IMG/VR virus record: IMGVR_UViG_3300037294_000266
Location: 62,001 to 126,000 of that record
DNA length: 64,000 nt
Direction: 5' to 3' (one strand)
The notes beneath the pieces are model-generated. The model saw nothing but the letters and a program-made list of their open reading frames with translations, was not told where the DNA came from and did no database searches. Positions 53,062 to 61,090 of the stretch are shown piece by piece. Both the position numbers and the translations under genes were made by a program. Within the stretch, counting starts at the first letter, position 1. Every line of letters starts with the position of its first letter.

Positions 53062-53296
53062 GACGATATCCTTTATATTGCGACAATGAAATCATTGTCG
53101 AGGCGGCATAACACCCTACTGGATTTCTCCAGTAGGGTGACAGAGGCTTATTTCGGTTACTGCTTCAACCGTGTCACGTGCTGCGGCGGGTATTGCAACC
53201 AGATCGTACAACAGTCCATCAGGATATTACACATCGAACCATTCCCAGGATGAACCTCCAGGACGGCTAGCCTCTCCATGGTGCGGTGAGGGCGTG

Positions 53297-54206: not shown

Positions 54207-54653
54207 TTAAAGGCCGCACCAACCAACTTTAGTGCCGCCAGAATAAGGGACTGCGAGTCCTCGAGCAATAAGCTCATCTCCAACGACTCTGCCGTCTACG
54301 ACCACAGTGGCCAGTAAGCGAAAGTACTTATCACGATCGAGGTTGGTCAGTGTCACTCGTTTACCATTGGCAATCATTTCACCGACAGCGTCACGAGCTT
54401 TTATGGCCAGTATTTTCTCTGCATCACGTTCAGCCTTTGTGGCACAGTCACTCCGCATCTCTGGTGTATCGATGCCATTTACTCTGACTGACAACCGATC
54501 TCCAAAGACATCAGGCAGGTACGGAATCTGGACAGTGAGTGTGTCACCATCGTAGATACTGACAACGTCCTCAGGAATGAGTTTTATCTCTTCAAGAGGA
54601 TACGCTTGAACGGTGCCACATGCCAGCAGAAAACTAAGAAGTAAAATACGCAT
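54207..54653 (-). CDS. Secreted thermonuclease (SNase family)
   Basis: Signal peptide, YDGDT, VRVNGIDTPE, DKYFRLLA, LIARGLA. Confidence 0.9.
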   Translation of the reverse strand: MRILLLSFLLACGTVQAYPLEEIKLIPEDVVSIYDGDTLTVQIPYLPDVFGDRLSVRVNGIDTPEMRSDCATKAERDAEKILAIKARDAVGEMIANGKRVTLTNLDRDKYFRLLATVVVDGRVVGDELIARGLAVPYSGGTKVGWCGL

Positions 54654-54797
54654 GATGACTCCAGGTCAATGACAGTTAATTCATAGTCATTGACCTGTAA
54701 AGGGGTGAGTGATGAGTTTACCAAACTAGGTGGTCACCCGCGCAACGGAGACCTCATCAACTCGATCAACACTGTCCATGGCAGGACAGAGTTAAAA

Positions 54798-54885
54798 TGG
54801 CGGAAGCGGTGAGATTCGAACTCACGGACCCCGAAGAGTCGACAGTTTTCAAGACTGTAGGATTCAACCGCTCTCCCACGCTTCC
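54798..54885 (-). tRNA. trnS: tRNA-Ser(UGA)
   Basis: Complete type II cloverleaf GGAAGCG...ACAGTCT-TGA-AAACTGT...long variable arm...GTTCGAATC...CGCTTCC-G-CCA. Confidence 0.97.
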
Positions 54886-54890
54886 AATAC

Positions 54891-54963
54891 AGGTGCTGAT
54901 ACCGGGAATCGAACCCGAGTCCTCCGTCACCAACAGGTGCGCCTTCTCTGCGCCACTATCTAC
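54891..54963 (-). ncRNA. Degenerate tRNA-like element (intact T-arm, weak anticodon arm, ACCT end)
   Basis: D-stem GCGC/GCGC, T-arm TCGGG-TTCGATT-CCCGG, acceptor 6/7 bp. Confidence 0.6.
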
Positions 54964-54965
54964 CA

Positions 54966-55039
54966 AGTAGATAGACAGGACTTTAACCTGCGACCTCCTG
55001 TCTCGTTTACCGGGACACTACCAGCTGAGCTATAACGGC
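54966..55039 (-). ncRNA. Degenerate tRNA-like element with non-matching acceptor strands
   Basis: TAGCTCAGCTGGTAG D-region, T-arm GCAGG-TTAAAGT-CCTGT. Its 3' strand CTATCTAC pairs with the next element rather than its own 5' end. Confidence 0.55.
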
Positions 55040-55044
55040 GAAAT

Positions 55045-55133
55045 AGGCGGAGAGCCACCTTAGACTTCCTGATGTGCCCGACGGGAGAGCACGGAAGTAA
55101 CGGGTTAGATTAGCACCCTCCAAGGGGCTCTCC
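55045..55133 (-). ncRNA. Y-shaped RNA with long acceptor-like stem and G-CCT tail
   Basis: GGAGAGCC/GGCTCTCC plus CCTTGG/CTAAGG, hairpins GGGT/ACCC and ACTTCC-GTGC/GCAC-GGAAGT. Confidence 0.55.
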
Positions 55134-55137
55134 TGTT

Positions 55138-55258
55138 TGGTCCAAGTATCCGGGTTCGAACCGGTGGAGTATAACATCCGATCGACGTGCGACCATAGTC
55201 GCGTTCGTCATCAGACATCACTCCCAGAGCCACCTCCCAAACCCGATCATAATCTTGG
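55138..55258 (-). ncRNA. 121-nt tRNA-like RNA with long irregular stem replacing the anticodon arm
   Basis: Acceptor CCAAG/CTTGG with A-CCA end, T-arm CCGG-TTCGAAC-CCGG, about 24-bp interrupted stem capped by GCGAC-TATG-GTCGC. Confidence 0.7.
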
Positions 55259-55440
55259 GACTAAGGCCGAATTACACGGCGAGCACGGATCTCTGTACTT
55301 GTACACTAGGCGCGAGCGTTTACGACCATCGAGTTCTTTTGCTTCCGAACGCTAAAGGTAAGGGGCCTCGACGTCATCTACTCGCATTAATCGGTTCTCT
55401 CACTGCGGATCTCTACATATATCAGCAGTGTTAATATTTT

Positions 55441-56691
55441 TTAATTGGTTATTACAGTACACCCACGGCTTATTAAAGTGTTTTTAGACGCTATACCGTT
55501 TGCAGAAGGTGCAGCGCTGGTTCCAGTTATTGTAATGTTTTCATTAGTAAATAACGTGGTCCCATTAGTTCCGTCTAATGAAGCAAATTGTGCAAGAAGA
55601 GCATCGACAGAAACAGCTGATAGTGGACAGTTGATATAAACCGATCCATTGACTTCTTTTAAACTATTGCTTAATTTAAATATAGTGAGTCCAGTCAGCG
55701 TAGGCCCGAGACTTATAGCATTGCCGTCAGTTAGGTTACAGCCTATTTTCTCTAACGAACTAAAGGTTAAATTTGTTATAGCTGGTGCTGTTGAAATACT
55801 TAGCCTTCCTTTAATTTGAGTTAAATTAGGAAGACTGACGGTTGTACATGCAGCCAATTCGTTTATACTGAAATTACCTTCTACAGTGGTCAAGCCGGCA
55901 AAGTTAACCGTGGTGCACCCAGCTAAGGTGTTTAACGAAAAGTTACCGTATACCGTAATCAATGAAGGGACGGAGATTATTGCAAAGGCTACATTACTTG
56001 CTATGTTAAAATTACCAACCACCACAGTCAATAGCGGACAAGATAAACTTGTTAGACCAGCCAGGTTAGAGGTAGAGAAACCACCCATTACAACCTTTAA
56101 CTCTGGAAAATTAAGAAAGGATAATGCAACCAATCCACTAATCGACAAGGTCCCTGTAAGGCCTTGTAAATTACTGAACGTTAAAGTCGTTATATCCACG
56201 TTAGCACTTGGAACGACTAACGTGGAAGCCCAAATGCCTGAATAGTCCGGAGTCACAACACTATTTATAGCGGTCGGGGGAGGTGTCAGGATAGCTGTAA
56301 TTGGTTCAGCCACCACTCCTACTGTTGAATAATCTAAAATAAATAAAGTACCGATTGGTGTACCGCCTAAACTAAACCAATCATCCCCATTAAATCCTTC
56401 GAACCATGTGAAATCGGTATTAAACCTAAAATGTCCGCCCTCGGTTACAATGGGGCGGTTTAGTGTAGAACCTACTGAAAACCATTTAACTAAAAAGTCT
56501 AATTTAATTTTATCATCAGACGACATAAAACCGTTTTCTAAAAGGTTTACAATGGCGTGAGCGAGACTTCCAGATTCAAGATGACTTAATAGTGCTGGAG
56601 GTATCAGATCTTGCTTTTTATCAACCCTGGCTATGAGACGTGTCATCAATTTGTTAAATTCTTTTACCATTGTTTCGATGACAGTTGTCAT
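55441..56691 (-). CDS. AT-rich L-domain/LRR-like beta-solenoid protein (possible tail appendage or receptor-binding protein)
   Basis: About 23-aa repeats (F/L-P-x-L-x-x-V-x-G-x-F-x-I), C-cap AAPSANGIASKNTLISRGCTVITN. Start revised to 56691. Confidence 0.75.
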   Translation of the reverse strand: MTTVIETMVKEFNKLMTRLIARVDKKQDLIPPALLSHLESGSLAHAIVNLLENGFMSSDDKIKLDFLVKWFSVGSTLNRPIVTEGGHFRFNTDFTWFEGFNGDDWFSLGGTPIGTLFILDYSTVGVVAEPITAILTPPPTAINSVVTPDYSGIWASTLVVPSANVDITTLTFSNLQGLTGTLSISGLVALSFLNFPELKVVMGGFSTSNLAGLTSLSCPLLTVVVGNFNIASNVAFAIISVPSLITVYGNFSLNTLAGCTTVNFAGLTTVEGNFSINELAACTTVSLPNLTQIKGRLSISTAPAITNLTFSSLEKIGCNLTDGNAISLGPTLTGLTIFKLSNSLKEVNGSVYINCPLSAVSVDALLAQFASLDGTNGTTLFTNENITITGTSAAPSANGIASKNTLISRGCTVITN

Positions 56692-56721
56692 ATATAAATT
56701 TCCTGTGCTCATTTTGTGGAT

Positions 56722-56763
56722 GTAACATCCGATCAGAGTAATGGTACTCTGATCGGATGTTAC
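56722..56763. terminator. 19-bp perfect stem-loop
   Basis: GTAACATCCGATCAGAGTA-ATGG-TACTCTGATCGGATGTTAC. Confidence 0.7.
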
Positions 56764-56820
56764 GTCGAGCGCGGATCTTTATACGAGTCATGTCATCTAC
56801 TCACATTGACTTTATAGCCT

Positions 56821-57090
56821 TTAACAGCCTAATGAGCAGATCTCTTCGTTACCTACAACTATCTTGACCAAAGGTCGCTCTCCAGACGCATCGAGCTTTA
56901 CGTCGATGTCGTATTCATGGAAACCAGCCTTCTGGTCTTCGAGGGCTTCGTTCATTGCATGACGAGTGCGTTCATCAATAAGGACATCGCCAGTCTCCGA
57001 TAATGCATGGAGGGTGGCTCTTACTCTTAGAACTACCGCATCTACAATGGACTTGTCTGCGGGACGGTAGATATCAAGCTTCTTACTCAT
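56821..57090 (-). CDS. Hypothetical protein
   Basis: 89 aa, GAGG SD. Confidence 0.65.
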   Translation of the reverse strand: MSKKLDIYRPADKSIVDAVVLRVRATLHALSETGDVLIDERTRHAMNEALEDQKAGFHEYDIDVKLDASGERPLVKIVVGNEEICSLGC

Positions 57091-57250
57091 ACCACTTCCT
57101 CAGACATAAATAACTACACGTTAGCTTCCATTGACCCACAGGCTTTTTCCGTCATCCAGGATCTCTCCTACACTGACGCCTATCCACAGGATTCACCTTA
57201 CGAGGGTTACTTTGGTTTGTGCTGTCATCGCTCGCGTGTATCGCAGTGCA

Positions 57251-57397
57251 CTACGATTCTTTACCGAATATCCTATCCATTGCCAGACGAAGTCTTTCTT
57301 CATCTTCTGGGGTAGGAGTAGGAAGGGGCTTTCCAGGGCAGGCGTGAATGCCACAGATATTACATATCGGACAACACTGCCTTTCGTCTTCTAACAT
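57251..57397 (-). CDS. Small Cys-rich protein (48 aa)
   Basis: MLEDERQCCPICNICGIHAC. The SD GGGGG is supplied by the 3' acceptor strand of the upstream tRNA-like element. Confidence 0.5.
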   Translation of the reverse strand: MLEDERQCCPICNICGIHACPGKPLPTPTPEDEERLRLAMDRIFGKES

Positions 57398-57491
57398 GAT
57401 ACCCCCTACAGGATTCGAACCCATGCTCGCGCAGTATCCGAATGCGAATTTGGACACTACCCAGCTCTAACCAACTGAGACTTAAAGAGGC
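57397..57491 (-). ncRNA. tRNA-like RNA with 7-bp anticodon stem and 12-nt loop
   Basis: Acceptor GCCTCTT/AGGGGGT, CTCAGTTGGTTAGAG D-arm, AGTGTCC/GGATACT, T-loop TTCGAAT, A-TCA end. Confidence 0.65.
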
Positions 57492-57504
57492 TTAACAGAA
57501 ATCG

Positions 57505-57825
57505 TGGGTTGATGACCTGAAGCGGTCTTAGATGTTTTCACATCACCCGTCAACCTACTGGGCTTGCCGTTACCATTTCGCCCGAATGGTCAAGGGGATC
57601 TGTCATACGCTTCTAGATCTTGGGCAGGGCGGTGACTAAACAGTTCTATTGTTCAGACACATCCTTCTCGGGGTGCGGCTTTGGACTTCCCTGATCGCAC
57701 GTCTCCAATAGACTAGAGGATGCGGTCGTAGGGTTTCAGATAAGAGATCAGACTGTGCAGTCCGGTGCCTAGGTGAGTAGGGCACTGTCTTGATCAATCA
57801 TTCCCCAGCTGGTTGAGGGGGAATT
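57505..57825 (-). ncRNA. Run of structured non-coding elements
   Basis: GGTTGA/TCAACC junction with GATGT-GAAA-ACATC and GACC/GGTC, plus ACCATT/AATGGT, GTGCC/GGCAC, GACTG/CAGTC and ATTCCCC/GGGGAAT. No ORF of 60 aa or more in the track. Confidence 0.5.
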
Positions 57826-57828
57826 AAA

Positions 57829-57910
57829 CACCTCTAGCGAGTCTCGAAGTCGCACACCGTCGATTAGAATGGCTACCAATCGACTGTCCTACCAATTGGA
57901 CGATAGAGGT
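57829..57910 (-). ncRNA. tRNA-like RNA with 7-bp anticodon stem and 12-nt loop
   Basis: Perfect acceptor ACCTCTA/TAGAGGT, D-arm GTCC-AATTGGTA-GGAC, GTCGATT/AATCGAC, T-loop TTCGAGA. No encoded CCA. Confidence 0.75.
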
Positions 57911-57924
57911 ATAAACGCTGTATG

Positions 57925-58050
57925 TAAGTATGATGGGATTCAAACCCACGTACGCTTTGGTATAGCCAATGGACTGGCACCTCGGCGTTCTAGTCCAACC
58001 GTCCGCGTTACCGGACATTTCACCCTTAAGCCAGGCTCAGGAACATACTC
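57925..58050 (-). ncRNA. 126-nt tRNA-like RNA with three hairpins between the D- and T-arms
   Basis: Acceptor GAGTATG/CATACTT, D-stem CCT/AGG, hairpins GTCC/GGAC, GGACT/AGTCC and TTGG/CCAA, T-arm GTGGG-TTTGAAT-CCCAT. Confidence 0.7.
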
Positions 58051-58060
58051 ACACACAAAC

Positions 58061-58148
58061 AGGTGGCAGCCGACCGAGTTCCCCCGATCCGATCCAGTAT
58101 GGGTTCGAAAACGCACTAAGGCAATCGACGTACTGAACTTAAGCTACC
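58061..58148 (-). ncRNA. Degenerate tRNA-like element (acceptor, long arm, T-like arm, ACCT end)
   Basis: GGTAGCT/GGCTGCC, TTCAGTA/TACTGGA, GATCG/CGGTC. Confidence 0.5.
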
Positions 58149-58157
58149 ATTGTAACG

Positions 58158-58270
58158 TCGAGAACGCGGGCCGGCGCCGCGTATGGCTGCCTCATTGGGC
58201 TGCCGATCATAGTGCGCGCTGCCACTAGGGCTGCCGCTGATCCGGTGCGGAGACGAACCCGCGTTCTCGA
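58158..58270. ncRNA. Multibranch hairpin with 13-bp closing stem and four GGCAGC motifs
   Basis: TCGAGAACGCGGG/CCCGCGTTCTCGA. GCTGCC on the + strand at 58186, 58199, 58218 and 58230. Confidence 0.65.
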
Positions 58271-58321
58271 ACTCTTACACGATTGTTAATCGTGATTAAA
58301 ATGGCGATTTGGCGTAATTAT

Positions 58322-58858
58322 TTAAGCTGTCGTATAGCGTTTACCGGAGTGTATGTTCTCTACAACACCCCTACTAATTCCAAACATTCTGGCTATTTCA
58401 CGCTGAGAATGTTTACCCTTTAATGAGAGAACTCTATTCGCCTCTTCTTGAGTAAGAACAGCATTATGACTATCGGCTCCGCGACGTTGTTTCAATAAAC
58501 CATTTTCTTTTGCATGGTCCATATTACCTTGCCGAGTAGTCCACTCTAATTGAGTGTAACCATTTTTGGCTTTATCGCAGAAAACATGATTGACTTCAAG
58601 ATCATCACTTTCTCTTCCAACAAAGGCTTTGGCAACCTGTACATGGATTTTTATACAGATGTTCTTACCCTTCCTACCACCTATTTTACTAGCATGGGTC
58701 AGGTAGCCATTATGATTCAATGTCTGAGACAGTATTTTACCTGTCCTGCGACTTCTCAAGGTGCCTTTCGAACCAATATCAAAGTGTTCTGGATAATCCG
58801 GACACGGAACAAATATTTCATCTTCGTCGTCAAGTGTCCAGCCAACTAATTTACTCAT
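58322..58858 (-). CDS. Free-standing NUMOD4-HNH homing endonuclease with C-terminal HTH
   Basis: IGSKGTLRS, IHVQVAKAF, EVNHVFCDKAKN...LEWTTRQGNMDHA, SQREIARMFGISRG. Start at 58858 with GGAGG. Confidence 0.85.
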   Translation of the reverse strand: MSKLVGWTLDDEDEIFVPCPDYPEHFDIGSKGTLRSRRTGKILSQTLNHNGYLTHASKIGGRKGKNICIKIHVQVAKAFVGRESDDLEVNHVFCDKAKNGYTQLEWTTRQGNMDHAKENGLLKQRRGADSHNAVLTQEEANRVLSLKGKHSQREIARMFGISRGVVENIHSGKRYTTA

Positions 58859-58865
58859 GTTGACC

Positions 58866-58889
58866 TCCATCTGTTTATTGTCAGATGGA
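58866..58889 (-). promoter_or_regulatory. Hairpin occluding the HNH ribosome-binding site
   Basis: TCCATCTG-ACAATAAA-CAGATGGA overlaps GGAGG, with TACATTA immediately upstream. Confidence 0.6.
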
Positions 58890-58912
58890 TAATGTATGAT
58901 CTAAAGAAAAGG

Positions 58913-58949
58913 AACAGCCAGCTACTCTACCTGTCTGAGCTATCATGGA
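58913..58949 (-). pseudogene. 5' half of tRNA-Asn(GUU), truncated right after the anticodon
   Basis: TCCATGA-TA-GCTC-AGACAGGTA-GAGT-A-GCTGG-CT-GTT, then unrelated HNH leader sequence. No matching 3' half (CCAGC...TCATGGA) found. Confidence 0.75.
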
Positions 58950-58957
58950 ATTAAATT

Positions 58958-59203
58958 GTGTAGCGCTGAGGACTTTCACCTCTCCTTTTCATGTCAGAGT
59001 TTAGTCGGACACGGAACACAACGCCACCTATGTTCAGAGTAATCGCCTGTCAGGACGGAATCCACCTTCATGGTGCGCGATGCGCACCATTGCTGACAGA
59101 CTATTGCTACAACGGAACGGAGACCAGTCCTATTCAGAACCGATAAGACAGCCGTGAAGAAGTCTCGTCCGTTCTGCCTTTGCAGCAAATTCTTCTAGGC
59201 ATA
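58958..59203 (-). ncRNA. Long-hairpin structured element(s) plus decayed tRNA-like tail
   Basis: TTGCTGCA/TGTAGCAA-closed hairpin, GTCTGTCAG/CTGACAGGC enclosing ATGGTGCGC/GCGCACCAT, T-like GAGG-TGAAAGT-CCTC. TATG at 59200-59203. Confidence 0.5.
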
Positions 59204-59223
59204 CAATACAGAGAATCAGTTAT

Positions 59224-59382
59224 TTAACACACCATCTCTGGAACTGGGATATCTTGTTCTTTACAGAATCGCTCAAGGTTAGCCTGAGCCAGTTGAAACT
59301 TCAAGACAGCTTTTAGAGTCTTCTGTCGGTTATCTTCAGAAGGACATCCTCTTAGTACAGCAACCTTAATCGTCTTGATCAT
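59224..59382 (-). CDS. Small hypothetical protein (52 aa)
   Basis: MIKTIKVAVLRG..., below the track cutoff. Confidence 0.4.
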   Translation of the reverse strand: MIKTIKVAVLRGCPSEDNRQKTLKAVLKFQLAQANLERFCKEQDIPVPEMVC

Positions 59383-59537
59383 GACCGATACCTCACGATG
59401 GGTACATTCTCCTCATCTGCACCTAGGACACGTGCCATTCTGGACGGGCTAGGATACAGATGAGGGGCTATCATCGCATCCAACATGGGACGCAAGTGTT
59501 TCACATATTGTACGCTAACAATGTTATTTTTTACAAG

Positions 59538-59969
59538 TCATTGTTCTTGGTTCAACACGTCGACAACCGAACCGAGCATATGAGCTGTCTTCAGATCAAT
59601 GATACCGCGCTGGAAGGATGAGTTGGCATGGTCGTGCCGATAACCCTCAATGGAGCTCAACACGGTACATAGCGTGTAAGAACGAATACGTCCTTCTCCA
59701 CACTGAATGTAGATCGCTTCCGCACCTGCCTTACGCTGTTCTTCACAGAACGCAACGAGCTGTTCACCTTTATCCTTAGTGAACAGTCGCTCTGCAGCTA
59801 CGTCGTTATGGAAGTGATCGCCTGGAAAGAAGCTAAGGCGAAGGACAGGACGGTTGGCTTCGTTAGGTATTTCGATATGGCTGGAGTAGACATCACCAAT
59901 ACTTACGATAGGGACATCCTTAGGAATGTCCTTTATGCGGTCTTTGCCGACATTGAGTAAACGGGTCAT
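59538..59969 (-). CDS. Protein-tyrosine/dual-specificity phosphatase-like protein
   Basis: IVSIGD...LRLSF...IYIQCGEGRIRS (CX5R P-loop). Confidence 0.7.
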   Translation of the reverse strand: MTRLLNVGKDRIKDIPKDVPIVSIGDVYSSHIEIPNEANRPVLRLSFFPGDHFHNDVAAERLFTKDKGEQLVAFCEEQRKAGAEAIYIQCGEGRIRSYTLCTVLSSIEGYRHDHANSSFQRGIIDLKTAHMLGSVVDVLNQEQ

Positions 59970-61090
59970 TCGTTTTCTTCCTTTACAGGGATGGGGATGT
60001 ACCATTCCGCATCGGGGAATAGTCCGTTCATGTACACTTCAACAGCATCTTTGACAGTGTTGAGGATGGATATTGGGAGTTGTCGTTCGCTTACATTCAC
60101 TCCATGAAGTTCGATGGTCTCAAACGTCAAGGGTGTTTTGTCACGCGCCCAGGAGTTCTTCATCTTCAATTCATTCATACGCTCCCAACTATTCCAGTCG
60201 GTATCGTTCGTAGAAATGGAGACGTGACCACCATCGAATTTAATCTGTCTGCCGTAGCCAGAACGAGAACGGTCGTTGAAATGATACATGCCTTTATTAA
60301 GGGCCGCAATCACTCGATCAGAATGGACTTTGCCAGCAGCGATCTCGAGCAGTGCGGATGGAGAGAACGAGCGACGTGATTGGTTATGCGCCGAGCTTAG
60401 TATGGTATCGACAGTTTCATCAACCATCAATTCTTCAGCCAGTACATCGAGGACGCTTTGGGCGAGGTACTTGTTAGTAAGGGACACGAACGCGTCTTCG
60501 ACATGATGGCAGAGATGTGCTGAATGGTATTGGAAATTGTTGTTATAAAGCGCATGACTGCGTTCGATCGATCCGGTAAGATCCCACCAACACTCTGGAG
60601 TATAGATGCGGTAACTGACCTTATCGATATATGACATACCTTCACTGGAAGAGGATTTAGGAGTCAATTCAATGTCGATGATCAACGACCCAGAATGAAT
60701 GACCTTTATCATCTTGCCATCAGTATCAAAGTCACCCGTCGGCCATAGCTTCATTAACATCTGACTCCATCGGCACATGGCGTAGATCAGATGTTCTTCA
60801 TCGATGACAGGGAGGACTTTAACAGCTAGGTTGTCAAGATTACCTTCGACGGTTTGGCCGAGGTATTTACACGCATTACGCAAAGCCGTTGACTGGATGC
60901 CACGACCGCTCAAAATAGTACCTTCATGACTAGTGGTAATCATGCCGATGTTCGCCATGGCGTTGTCAGCGATCTGGCGGAATTCATTTCTCACCATCTC
61001 CGGCAACGCGGCGTTGTTAGACAACTGACTGAGACCAGATGCAATCATATCCAAAGTCTGTCTGATGTGAAGCATGTTCATAGTGTCCAT
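59966..61090 (-). CDS. Hypothetical protein
   Basis: 374 aa after start revision. Confidence 0.7.
   Translation of the reverse strand: MDTMNMLHIRQTLDMIASGLSQLSNNAALPEMVRNEFRQIADNAMANIGMITTSHEGTILSGRGIQSTALRNACKYLGQTVEGNLDNLAVKVLPVIDEEHLIYAMCRWSQMLMKLWPTGDFDTDGKMIKVIHSGSLIIDIELTPKSSSSEGMSYIDKVSYRIYTPECWWDLTGSIERSHALYNNNFQYHSAHLCHHVEDAFVSLTNKYLAQSVLDVLAEELMVDETVDTILSSAHNQSRRSFSPSALLEIAAGKVHSDRVIAALNKGMYHFNDRSRSGYGRQIKFDGGHVSISTNDTDWNSWERMNELKMKNSWARDKTPLTFETIELHGVNVSERQLPISILNTVKDAVEVYMNGLFPDAEWYIPIPVKEENE

What the first reader, a model, noticed from the sequence alone, without database searches (positions are those of the whole stretch)
57925..58050. Type II-like tRNA body with the anticodon arm replaced by two hairpins
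It has a Leu/Ser/Tyr-style D-arm, intact acceptor and T-arm, and three internal hairpins. None has a 7-nt U-turn anticodon loop.
Basis: partly seen in the sequence, partly recalled or inferred. Interest (0 to 1): 0.6.

Follow-up and report, generated by a model that had tools for sequence, protein, structure and literature searches.

The report
Non-decoding tRNA-like RNA in jumbo phage
A 126-base gene in a giant bacteriophage keeps the acceptor stem, D arm and T arm of a serine-type transfer RNA but has no usable anticodon arm. It is conserved in a second, distant phage, so it is probably a working tRNA look-alike rather than a dead gene, much like the still unexplained small RNA C of phage T4.

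Summary
There is a 7-bp acceptor stem, a class-II D arm, a T arm and 73 nt in between. ARAGORN and the Rfam tRNA model both miss it. The window belongs to a 266.6-kb phiKZ-like jumbo phage from salt-lake and sediment metagenomes.

A homologue exists in a 267-kb compost-metagenome phage (L017). It is 94% identical, while neighbouring genes are 67-81% identical at the DNA level. The 8 differences include one compensatory acceptor pair. None of them breaks the fold predicted from our sequence alone (randomisation p about 0.025).

The shared fold has:
- a 9-bp hairpin with a 6-nt loop where the anticodon arm should be;
- an 8-nt single-stranded relic of a Ser-type anticodon loop;
- a 37-nt branched variable arm.

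A covariance model of the element hits tRNA-Ser genes (E 4e-6 to 5e-4) and T4 rnaC. The phage has no splicing endonuclease, RtcB, Rnl2, Ro or CCA enzyme. The element lacks the encoded CCA that all canonical tRNAs of this phage group carry.

It sits in a conserved island of structured RNAs bracketed by tRNAs, and sister strains carry a different small RNA in the same slot.

Best reading: a conserved, non-decoding, tRNA-derived small RNA, acting as a processing handle or a tRNA mimic. No expression data exist.

The parts
57925..58050 (-). The 126-nt tRNA-like element as a whole
   Evidence: Sequence, fold and homologue L017:12584-12709 at 94% identity. Model R1 scores 156 and 160 bits on the two copies.
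58044..58050 (-). Acceptor stem, 5' strand (positions 1-7). It pairs with 57926-57932. Discriminator A is at 57925.
   Evidence: All 7 pairs form. Pair 6:120 is U-A in our phage and C-G in L017, a compensatory change.
58023..58041 (-). Class-II D arm (positions 10-28): 3-bp stem and 13-nt loop containing GG
   Evidence: Read from the sequence. R1 aligns it to the D arms of tRNA-Ser genes.
57997..58020 (-). Hairpin H1 (positions 31-54) at the anticodon-arm position: up to 9 bp with the 6-nt loop GUAACG
   Evidence: The G52-to-U change in L017 adds an A33-U52 pair.
57989..57996 (-). Unpaired linker GGACUAGA (positions 55-62), a relic of a Ser-type anticodon stem and loop. The alternative 7-nt loop CUAGAAC lies at 57987-57993.
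   Evidence: R1 aligns it to the anticodon stem-loop of tRNA-Ser(UGA) genes. The ARAGORN deletion scan reads it as Ser(AGA).
57952..57988 (-). Enlarged variable arm (positions 63-99): an outer 4-5 bp stem enclosing a 7-bp bulged hairpin
   Evidence: The outer stem and its 3' strand align to the variable arm of a tRNA-Ser(GCU) in a 485-kb phage. Positions 67:95 are C.A in our phage and U.G in L017.
57933..57949 (-). T arm (positions 102-118)
   Evidence: The loop is UUUGAAU in our phage and the canonical UUCGAAU in L017.
57918..57924 (-). 3' trailer ACAUACA. It pairs with the 5' leader at 58051-58057 and extends the acceptor helix to 14 bp.
   Evidence: the repeat finder pair I1. Both flanks are conserved in L017. 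No CCA is encoded.
57829..57910 (-). Neighbouring 82-nt tRNA-like gene with a 16-nt anticodon loop and a C.C mismatch in the T stem. It lies within an 89-nt insert (57825-57913) that L017 lacks.
   Evidence: Rfam tRNA 41.5 bits, ARAGORN relaxed mode, alignment with L017.
57492..57826 (-). Structured RNA domain of about 330 nt immediately downstream
   Evidence: RNAalifold on our phage and L017 gives 80 pairs: 6 compensatory, 7 changed on one side, 0 broken. No Rfam match.
57400..57491 (-). Aberrant 92-nt tRNA-like element with an extended anticodon stem. L017 has a canonical tRNA-His at this position.
   Evidence: ARAGORN relaxed mode; alignment with L017.
58061..58270 (-). Conserved upstream RNA/DNA module: a hairpin (58158-58270) with four GGCAGCC motifs, a spacer, and GGUCGGCUGCCACCU (58061-58075)
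   Evidence: Conserved in L017 at 89.6%. Also present in phage DT01, with a compensated outer stem. The motif is clustered here.

Best explanation
The element is a gene for a conserved, non-decoding tRNA-like small RNA derived from a class-II (serine-type) tRNA.

Shown:
- It keeps the parts of a tRNA that processing and tRNA-binding proteins read: the acceptor-T minihelix and the D/T elbow.
- The decoding end is replaced by a long hairpin with a 6-nt loop, an unpaired relic of the anticodon loop, and a 37-nt branched variable arm.
- The fold is maintained by selection in two divergent jumbo phages.
- It lies in an island where structured RNAs alternate with tRNAs or tRNA-like genes.

Inferred:
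- It is transcribed with that island.
- Its tRNA-like top half is cut by host RNase P at the 5' side and by RNase Z/E plus exonucleases at the 3' side.
- This both releases the neighbouring structured RNAs (a punctuation role) and yields a stable tRNA-shaped RNA of about 126-140 nt that cannot enter translation.
- That RNA may in addition occupy a tRNA-binding partner, for example a tRNA-targeting defence nuclease or a synthetase.

My odds: about 0.6 for a functional structured RNA of any role. Within that, roughly half goes to processing handle and half to mimic or decoy.
For: Conservation:
- Homologue L017:12584-12709 lies in a syntenic 267-kb phage contig.
- The element plus flanks is 94.0% identical over 151 nt, while the surrounding genes are 67-81% identical at the DNA level.

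Substitution pattern:
- There are 8 substitutions in all.
- 6:120 is a U-A to C-G compensatory change.
- 52 adds a pair to H1.
- 67:95 goes from C.A to U.G.
- 82 and 21 lie in loops.
- 109 restores the canonical T loop.
- None of the 8 breaks the MFE structure predicted from our sequence alone. Random placement gives this result in 2.5% of 100,000 trials.

tRNA ancestry:
- Model R1 hits tRNA-Ser genes at 24-32 bits, E 4e-6 to 5e-4.

Context:
- In every genome type, the 330-nt domain with 6 compensatory pairs is bracketed by a tRNA or a tRNA-like element on both sides.

Precedent:
- T4's tRNA cluster encodes the small RNAs C and D, whose role is unknown (PMC3014915, PMC9697503).
- T4 rnaC has a 7-bp acceptor-like stem and a T arm, and R1 hits it at 21.7 bits.
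Against: - There is no RNA evidence. No RNA run holds the sequence, so transcription, ends and stability are all inferred.
- Only two homologues exist, so covariation rests on one clean compensatory pair. The shuffle control on two rows has no power.
- Sister strains about 98% identical in the flanks lack the element and carry an unrelated 118-nt RNA in the slot. It is therefore dispensable or exchangeable.
- The genome comparison is mosaic, and a homing endonuclease gene sits 270 nt away. High identity could partly reflect recent lateral exchange.
- The z-score of the fold is weak: -1.05 in our phage and -2.09 in L017.
- The 14-bp leader-trailer helix and the missing CCA are not typical of a good RNase P or CCA-addition substrate.
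Confidence: 0.6

Rival explanations
1. It is a decaying tRNA pseudogene: a former class-II tRNA scrambled by insertions or internal duplication in a fast-changing tRNA cluster that carries a homing endonuclease. It is neutral and has no function.
For: - This strain is visibly losing tRNAs. tRNA-Asn has lost its 3' half to an HNH gene cassette.
- tRNA-Thr(UGU) has been fused by deletion to a pseudo-tRNA.
- The neighbouring 82-nt and 92-nt elements also have damaged anticodon regions.
- Sister strains lack the element.
- No CCA is encoded, although every canonical tRNA of the group has one.
- A near-repeat starting AACGC (positions 42-53 and 62-72) hints at an internal duplication (read).
Against: - The element is 94% conserved in a phage whose adjacent genes are 67-81% identical.
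- There is a compensatory change in the acceptor stem, and 0 of 8 substitutions disrupt the fold (p about 0.025).
- All tertiary-interaction positions of the body are intact.
Confidence: 0.25
2. It is a real decoding tRNA, Ser(AGA) or Tyr(GUA), interrupted by one or two short introns that are spliced out.
For: - Deleting 23 nt (positions 28-30 to 50-52) lets ARAGORN call tRNA-Ser(AGA) through the arm at 53-69, once the long variable region is also shortened. That call accounts for 60 of the 84 passing variants out of 352,251 tested.
- The neighbouring gene also looks like a tRNA with a 9-nt insert in the anticodon loop.
Against: - The host range of this phage family is bacterial.
- The phage encodes no splicing endonuclease, RtcB or Rnl2.
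- The inserts are far too short for group I introns, and Rfam finds none.
- The insert junction is a continuous helix with no bulge-helix-bulge motif.
- The substitutions in L017 strengthen H1 and the variable stem, which compete with the 53-69 arm. They weaken that arm (G-C becomes G.U).
- A at the first anticodon position is unusual for a bacterial tRNA-Ser (my own knowledge).
Confidence: 0.03
3. The conservation acts on the DNA, not on an RNA. The stretch could be a recognition or immunity site for the adjacent HNH homing endonuclease, or another protein-binding site.
For: - The HNH gene lies 270 nt away.
- T4 SegB recognises a conserved tRNA-gene motif (PMC2330249).
- The region between the HNH gene and the cassette is more diverged from sister strains (about 5%) than the flanks, as expected for a co-conversion tract.
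Against: - L017 carries the element without an HNH gene next to it. Its HNH gene is 1.9 kb further on.
- A compensatory stem change and loop-biased substitutions point to an RNA fold, not a DNA site.
Confidence: 0.07
4. It is a chance resemblance, or part of the 119-codon ORF on the plus strand (57869-58228).
For: The ORF exists.
Against: - Sister strains replace part of the ORF and carry two 1-nt deletions inside it.
- A tRNA-like body of this quality occurs 0-2 times in shuffled genomes.
- R1 hits tRNA-Ser genes.
Confidence: 0.01

Closest known systems
Phage T4 RNA C (species 1 RNA, rnaC) and RNA D, the small stable RNAs of the T4 tRNA cluster
   Same: - It is encoded inside a phage tRNA cluster that also holds a homing endonuclease gene (PMC2330249).
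- T4 rnaC has a 7-bp acceptor-like stem and a canonical T arm, with long hairpins in place of the rest. Model R1 hits it at 21.7 bits.
- It is non-coding, and its role is unknown (PMC3014915, PMC9697503).
   Different: - There is no sequence homology outside the generic tRNA parts.
- T4 rnaC has no D arm.
- Our element keeps a full class-II D arm and a variable arm, and is recognisably derived from tRNA-Ser.
- Expression and stability are proven for T4 but untested here.
Class-II tRNA-Ser (Rfam RF00005 tRNA)
   Same: - The acceptor stem, D arm, variable-arm stem and T arm all align to tRNA-Ser genes of related and unrelated phages.
- The linker resembles the Ser anticodon stem-loop.
   Different: - It has no stable 5-bp anticodon stem with a 7-nt loop.
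- It carries about 40 extra nucleotides.
- The discriminator is A, not G.
- No CCA is encoded.
- It gets no score from the Rfam tRNA model.
tRNA-like processing signals (tRNA punctuation; the mascRNA type of 3'-end formation)
   Same: A tRNA-shaped module sits directly next to a larger structured RNA, so RNase P/Z cuts would define that RNA's ends.
   Different: Those systems are mitochondrial or eukaryotic. No cleavage has been shown here. The comparison rests on my own knowledge.
Bacterial Y RNA-like YrlA (tRNA-mimicking partner of Ro/Rsr)
   Same: It is a non-decoding RNA with tRNA-like D and T arms, and members occur in some jumbo phages (PMC7824862).
   Different: - In YrlA the tRNA-like domain is internal and the ends form the Ro-binding stem (my own knowledge).
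- Here the ends form the acceptor stem.
- The phage has no TROVE/Ro protein.
- Rfam YrlA gives no hit in the window.
Phage tRNAs with altered anticodon loops that escape tRNA-targeting defences
   Same: It is a phage tRNA-cluster gene whose anticodon region departs from the norm while the body is kept (PMC10264068, PMC11555353).
   Different: Those are still decoding tRNAs with 7-nt loops. This element cannot decode and could act only as a decoy. That idea is untested.

Membership tests
Canonical tRNA (RF00005) | 7-bp acceptor stem, D arm and T arm with the conserved tertiary nucleotides | tested here: met
   Read. The pairs are counted. The T loop has U at position 56 in our phage and C in L017.
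Canonical tRNA (RF00005) | 5-bp anticodon stem closing a 7-nt loop with U33 and a purine at 37, placed one nucleotide after the D stem | tested here: not met
   - The consensus fold has a 9-bp stem with a 6-nt loop at that place.
- The only 7-nt loop, CUAGAAC, needs a 4-pair arm with an A.G mismatch.
- That arm lies 24 nt away from the D stem and competes with supported helices.
Canonical tRNA (RF00005) | Score at or above the family's gathering threshold, or a call by a tRNA finder | tested here: not met
   There is no RF00005 hit even at E up to 10. ARAGORN does not call it, with or without introns.
Canonical tRNA of this phage group | Encoded 3' CCA | tested here: not met
   - Ser, Asn and Thr(UGU) carry CCA after the discriminator, as do Asn, Asp and His of L017 and Asn and Asp of DT01.
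- The element has CAU after the discriminator in both homologues.
Intron-containing tRNA (bulge-helix-bulge splicing) | Splicing endonuclease and ligase available | tested here: not met
   PF01974, RtcB and Rnl2 are absent from the complete phage genome. Hosts of this phage family are bacteria.
Intron-containing tRNA (bulge-helix-bulge splicing) | Two 3-nt bulges separated by a 4-bp helix at the exon-intron junctions | tested here: not met
   The base of hairpin H1 is a continuous helix, 9 bp in L017, without bulges. This was checked by inspection only.
Group I intron in a tRNA gene | Intron of about 200 nt or more with the conserved catalytic core | tested here: not met
   The extra sequence totals about 40 nt. 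There is no Intron_gpI hit in 54500-60100 at E up to 10.
tmRNA | tRNA-Ala-like domain plus a tag reading frame | tested here: not met
   ARAGORN finds no tmRNA. Rfam gives no tmRNA hit at the locus. The pair at 3:70 is G-C, not G.U.
YrlA / Y RNA-like | Ro/TROVE partner protein and a match to the Rfam YrlA model | tested here: not met
   No TROVE protein. No YrlA hit in the window.
T4 RNA C-type small RNAs of phage tRNA clusters | Located in a phage tRNA cluster; acceptor-like stem plus T arm; non-decoding interior | tested here: met
   Context.
T4 RNA C-type small RNAs of phage tRNA clusters | Accumulates as a discrete stable RNA during infection | not testable with these tools
   No RNA run holds the sequence. 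The runs laid were DNA contigs.
T4 RNA C-type small RNAs of phage tRNA clusters | Sequence homology to T4 rnaC | tested here: inconclusive
   The 21.7-bit match rests on the acceptor and T-arm columns that any tRNA shares.
tRNA pseudogene | Neutral evolution: substitutions hit stems and loops alike, and conservation is no higher than in the surroundings | tested here: not met
   0 of 8 substitutions break the fold (p about 0.025). Identity is 94% against 67-81% for the neighbouring genes. Only one pairwise comparison was available.

The most novel reading that the evidence does not exclude
The element is one module of a previously undescribed jumbo-phage operon of structured RNAs, in which exchangeable tRNA-shaped cassettes alternate with larger folded RNAs. 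In this reading the tRNA-shaped RNA itself is active. It would be either a non-decoding type-II tRNA mimic that titrates a host tRNA-targeting defence nuclease, or an RNA charged by an anticodon-independent synthetase (SerRS) that carries an amino acid for a purpose outside the ribosome.
Probability: 0.15. Interest if true: 0.8.

Novelty: new variant of a known kind. Interest (0 to 1): 0.5.

Why it matters
Phage tRNA clusters have been known for fifty years to hold small stable RNAs that are not tRNAs (T4 RNA C and D), and their role is still unknown. This element is a cleaner case. Its descent from tRNA-Ser can be traced arm by arm. It is kept by selection in two distant nucleus-forming-type jumbo phages. 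It also sits in an island where structured RNAs alternate with tRNAs and where closely related strains swap cassettes.

That gives a testable model for what such RNAs do: a processing handle, a decoy or a carrier. It also points to several other unannotated structured RNAs in this phage group.

For annotation, it shows that tRNA finders miss a class of conserved tRNA-derived genes.

Tried and rejected
- **Archaeal or eukaryotic intron-bearing tRNA.** This was my first idea. I dropped it once the genome proved to be a phiKZ-like phage without splicing enzymes.
- **Searches for more relatives.**
  - Exact-pattern scans of IMG/VR gave only chance hits or none.
  - The JGI metagenome scan found nothing.
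  - Protein-anchored scans of IMG/VR found nothing.
  - blastn against GenBank phages found nothing beyond a 25-nt T-arm match to a tRNA-Ser.
  - The homologue came only through a neighbouring protein.
  - R1 finds no other copy in this genome or in DT01.
- **A second "tRNA body with a 73-nt insert" at 55039-54892.** This is a deletion chimera of tRNA-Thr(UGU) and a pseudo-tRNA, so it is not a second member.
- **"Ultraconservation" of 57495-57820 among sister strains.** It is not significant, because many 300-nt windows differ by only 0-3 bases in this mosaic comparison. The case for that RNA rests on L017 instead.
- **GGTCGGCTGNCACCTGTT as a phage promoter.** It occurs only once in the genome.
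- **Internal repeats.** The tool reported no direct-repeat family. The AACGC near-repeat is my own reading.
- **Sigma-70 promoter and terminator scans.** They showed nothing above shuffles.
- **Resemblance of the D arm to bacterial tRNA-Tyr, and a GUA in the H1 loop.** Both are from memory only and were not tested. The model-based evidence favours Ser.
- **Sequencing runs.** Read laying was given 2,901 letters.

Full report
**Where it is.** The window is bases 62001-126000 of a single 266,646-bp IMG/VR virus record rated complete, with 48.5% G+C. Its proteins place it among phiKZ-like jumbo phages. The baseplate-hub protein next to the locus matches 252 jumbo-phage records, and the best match is Pseudomonas phage pPa_SNUABM_DT01 at 65% identity. 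PHROG and Pfam hits are phage-typical. Near-identical DNA occurs in salt-lake and sediment metagenomes, and no RNA run holds it.

**The observation.** The element reads on the minus strand from 58050 to 57925.
- It has a 7-bp acceptor stem, U8 and U9, and discriminator A.
- The D arm has a 3-bp stem and a 13-nt loop with the usual A14, GG and A21 positions.
- The T arm has 5 bp and a 7-nt loop, and a C sits before the T stem.
- Between the D and T arms lie 73 nt.
- ARAGORN does not call it, even with introns allowed and a relaxed threshold.
- The Rfam tRNA model does not see it. Only tRNA-Sec gives a chance-level 19 bits.

It is still not a chance resemblance.
- A strict scan for a T arm followed by a 7-bp acceptor stem finds three places in the genome, against 0-2 in shuffled genomes.
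- A covariance model built from the element (R1) hits class-II tRNA-Ser genes of this and other phages at 24-32 bits, E 4e-6 to 5e-4. That is well above other tRNA types.
- The 119-codon ORF on the opposite strand is not conserved. Sister strains replace part of it and carry two 1-nt deletions in the rest.

**A homologue.** Pattern and protein-anchored scans of IMG/VR and JGI metagenomes found no relative. GenBank phages gave nothing either. A homologue of the adjacent 371-aa protein (54% identical) led to a 267,400-nt compost-metagenome contig with the same gene order.

That contig carries the element at L017:12584-12709, with 8 differences in 126 nt. Across the two phages the neighbouring genes are 67-81% identical at the DNA level. 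The element with its immediate flanks is 94.0% identical over 151 nt, among the best-conserved stretches of the 12-kb comparison.

The substitutions are placed as follows:

| Position | Change | Effect |
|---|---|---|
| 6 and 120 | U-A to C-G | compensatory pair in the acceptor stem |
| 52 | G to U | adds an A-U pair to the first internal hairpin |
| 67 and 95 | C.A to U.G | at the base of the variable-arm stem |
| 21 and 82 | C to U; U to A | lie in loops |
| 109 | U to C | turns the T loop into the canonical UUCGAAU |

None of the eight breaks a pair of the MFE structure predicted from our sequence alone. Placing eight substitutions of the same kinds at random achieves that in 2.5% of 100,000 trials. 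With only two sequences the formal covariation statistics have no power. This is therefore suggestive, not proof.

**The shared fold.**
- Acceptor stem, positions 1-7 with 119-125.
- D arm, positions 10-28.
- Hairpin H1, positions 31-54, with up to 9 bp and the loop GUACCG-type hexaloop GUAACG. It stands where the anticodon arm should be.
- An unpaired linker GGACUAGA, positions 55-62.
- A variable arm, positions 63-99. Its outer 4-5 bp stem encloses a 7-bp bulged hairpin.
- T arm, positions 102-118.

R1 alignments to tRNA-Ser genes show what happened. The outer variable stem and its 3' strand correspond to the Ser variable arm. The linker corresponds to the 5' strand and loop of the Ser anticodon arm. 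H1 and the inner hairpin are extra.

A systematic deletion scan gave the same picture. Of 352,251 one- or two-deletion variants, only 84 pass ARAGORN. Of these, 60 read as Ser(AGA) through the arm at 53-69 after removal of the 23 nt that contain H1. That arm has only four pairs plus an A.G mismatch. It overlaps both H1 and the variable stem, and it is weakened in L017 (G-C becomes G.U). I take it to be a relic. The leader and trailer extend the acceptor helix to 14 bp, and both are conserved in L017.

**Why it is not a decoding or spliced tRNA.**
- The stem at the anticodon position is nearly twice the normal length and closes a 6-nt loop.
- The phage has no splicing endonuclease, RtcB, Rnl2-type ligase, CCA-adding enzyme or Ro protein.
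- The extra sequence is far too short for a group I intron, and Rfam finds none.
- The junctions show a continuous helix, not a bulge-helix-bulge motif.
- Every canonical tRNA of this phage group encodes CCA after the discriminator: Ser, Asn and Thr(UGU) here and in sister strains, Asn, Asp and His in L017, and Asn and Asp in DT01.
- The element does not encode CCA in either phage.

**Context.** The element lies in a 1-kb non-coding island that is far better conserved between our phage and L017 than the flanking genes. Reading along the minus strand, the island contains:
1. tRNA-Asn (plus tRNA-Asp in L017).
2. A hairpin carrying four GGCAGCC motifs, followed by a spacer.
3. The tRNA-like element.
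4. A 330-nt domain with 80 predicted pairs, of which 6 changed on both sides, 7 on one side and none is broken.
5. A further tRNA: canonical His in L017, and an aberrant 92-nt tRNA-like element in our phage.

So each larger structured RNA is bracketed by tRNAs or tRNA-shaped genes. The slot is also a cassette.
- Sister strains about 98% identical in the flanks carry an unrelated 118-nt RNA there. It has a 7-bp terminal stem, with or without an extra 100-nt hairpin RNA.
- Our phage has an additional 82-nt tRNA-like gene that L017 lacks.
- An HNH endonuclease gene 270 nt upstream has replaced the 3' half of tRNA-Asn in our strain only.
- tRNA-Thr(UGU) has been lost through a deletion between two D arms.

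**Interpretation.** The body that tRNA-processing and tRNA-binding proteins read is kept, the decoding end is not, and the fold is under constraint. The most economical mechanism is as follows. The RNA is transcribed with the island and recognised as a tRNA by host RNase P and the 3'-end nucleases. Those cuts define the ends of the neighbouring structured RNAs and leave a stable tRNA-shaped RNA. Whether that RNA has a further role as a mimic or decoy of type-II tRNAs is open. tRNA-targeting defences and phage counter-measures are well documented (PMC10264068, PMC11555353, PMC13056530), but nothing here tests the link.

The main rival is a neutral relic in a cluster that is visibly losing tRNAs. 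Its absence from sister strains and the mosaic, endonuclease-driven exchange in this region keep that rival at about one in four.

**Closest known.** T4 encodes RNA C and RNA D in its tRNA cluster, next to the segB homing endonuclease, and their role is unknown (PMC2330249, PMC3014915, PMC9697503). Folding T4 rnaC shows a 7-bp acceptor-like stem and a canonical T arm with long hairpins inside. R1 ranks it second in the T4 tRNA region, after tRNA-Ser. The present element is the same kind of object but is not homologous. It keeps more of the tRNA, namely the D arm and the variable arm, and its ancestry is traceable. I therefore rate it a new variant of a known kind.

**Limits.** There are no RNA data, only two homologues, and the host is unknown. 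All processing steps are inferred.

Noticed in passing
window 57492-57826 (-), L017:12718-13052: A structured RNA domain of about 330 nt lies directly downstream of the tRNA-like cassette. It is closed by a long-range 15-bp helix. Between the two phages (83.6% identity) 6 pairs changed on both sides, 7 on one side and none is broken. No Rfam family matches it. Its position next to tRNAs in a phage recalls the large phage-associated RNAs GOLLD and ROOL (my own knowledge), but it does not match them.
   Followed up: partly
window 58158-58270 (-) plus 58061-58075; L001:17660-17805: A hairpin carries four GGCAGCC motifs, with a fifth, complementary copy (GGCUGCC) about 90 nt downstream. The motif occurs 38 times in 266 kb, and 5 of those fall within about 210 nt here. 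It is conserved in L017. It is also present in the distant phage DT01, where the outer stem is fully compensated and the order of the modules is permuted.
   Followed up: partly
window 58305-58949 (-): An HNH/NUMOD4 homing-endonuclease gene (58322-58870) has replaced the 3' half of tRNA-Asn(GUU). The break lies right after the anticodon, and the 5' half remains at 58949-58913. Sister strains and L017 have the intact gene. This parallels segB in the T4 tRNA cluster (PMC2330249).
   Followed up: yes
window 54964-55039 (-); L010:8040-8340: Sister strains have an intact tRNA-Thr(UGU), a spacer and a pseudo-tRNA at this place. Our strain has a 205-nt deletion that joins the two at their similar D arms. 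The resulting chimera mimics a tRNA with a 73-nt insert when ARAGORN is run in intron mode.
   Followed up: yes
window 57829-57910 (-) and 57400-57491 (-): Two more tRNA-shaped genes have damaged anticodon regions and no CCA. The first is 82 nt long with a 16-nt anticodon loop and a C.C mismatch in the T stem (Rfam 41.5 bits). It sits in an 89-nt insert flanked by a GTTTA direct repeat that L017 lacks. The second is 92 nt long, with an extended anticodon stem and a 12-nt loop, at the place where L017 has a canonical tRNA-His.
   Followed up: partly
L010:5020-5280, L008:5135-5280, L017:12483-12573: The slot upstream of the 330-nt RNA holds different small hairpin RNAs in different strains. One is a 118-nt RNA with a 7-bp terminal stem; it differs between two strains at 5 sites, and the two that fall in stems are both G.U-to-G-C changes. 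In addition, L010 and L017 each carry an unrelated hairpin of 90-100 nt.
   Followed up: partly
L001:18232-18305 (phage DT01, MW735835.1 about 171763-171836): DT01 has an unannotated 75-nt tRNA-like element with a 7-bp acceptor stem and a good T arm but a broken anticodon stem. It is followed by 430 nt of non-coding sequence with a fold z-score of -2.3. This may be an analogous arrangement, although R1 does not hit it.
   Followed up: partly
window 54801-54885 (-) versus L010:8411-8495: The functional tRNA-Ser(UGA) differs between otherwise near-identical strains in its D arm, anticodon stem, variable arm and T stem. The changes are compensated, while the acceptor stem and anticodon loop are the same. 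This suggests whole-gene replacement within the cluster.
   Followed up: no
window 55041-55140 (-), 57125-57213 (-), 53104-53258 (-): Three further non-coding blocks are 91-95% identical between our phage and L017, although the surrounding genes are 67-81% identical. They may be more conserved RNAs or regulatory sites.
   Followed up: no
window 57254-57400 (-): There is a possible 48-codon ORF rich in Cys-x-x-Cys pairs just downstream of the 92-nt element. It is not listed among the called genes (read).
   Followed up: no
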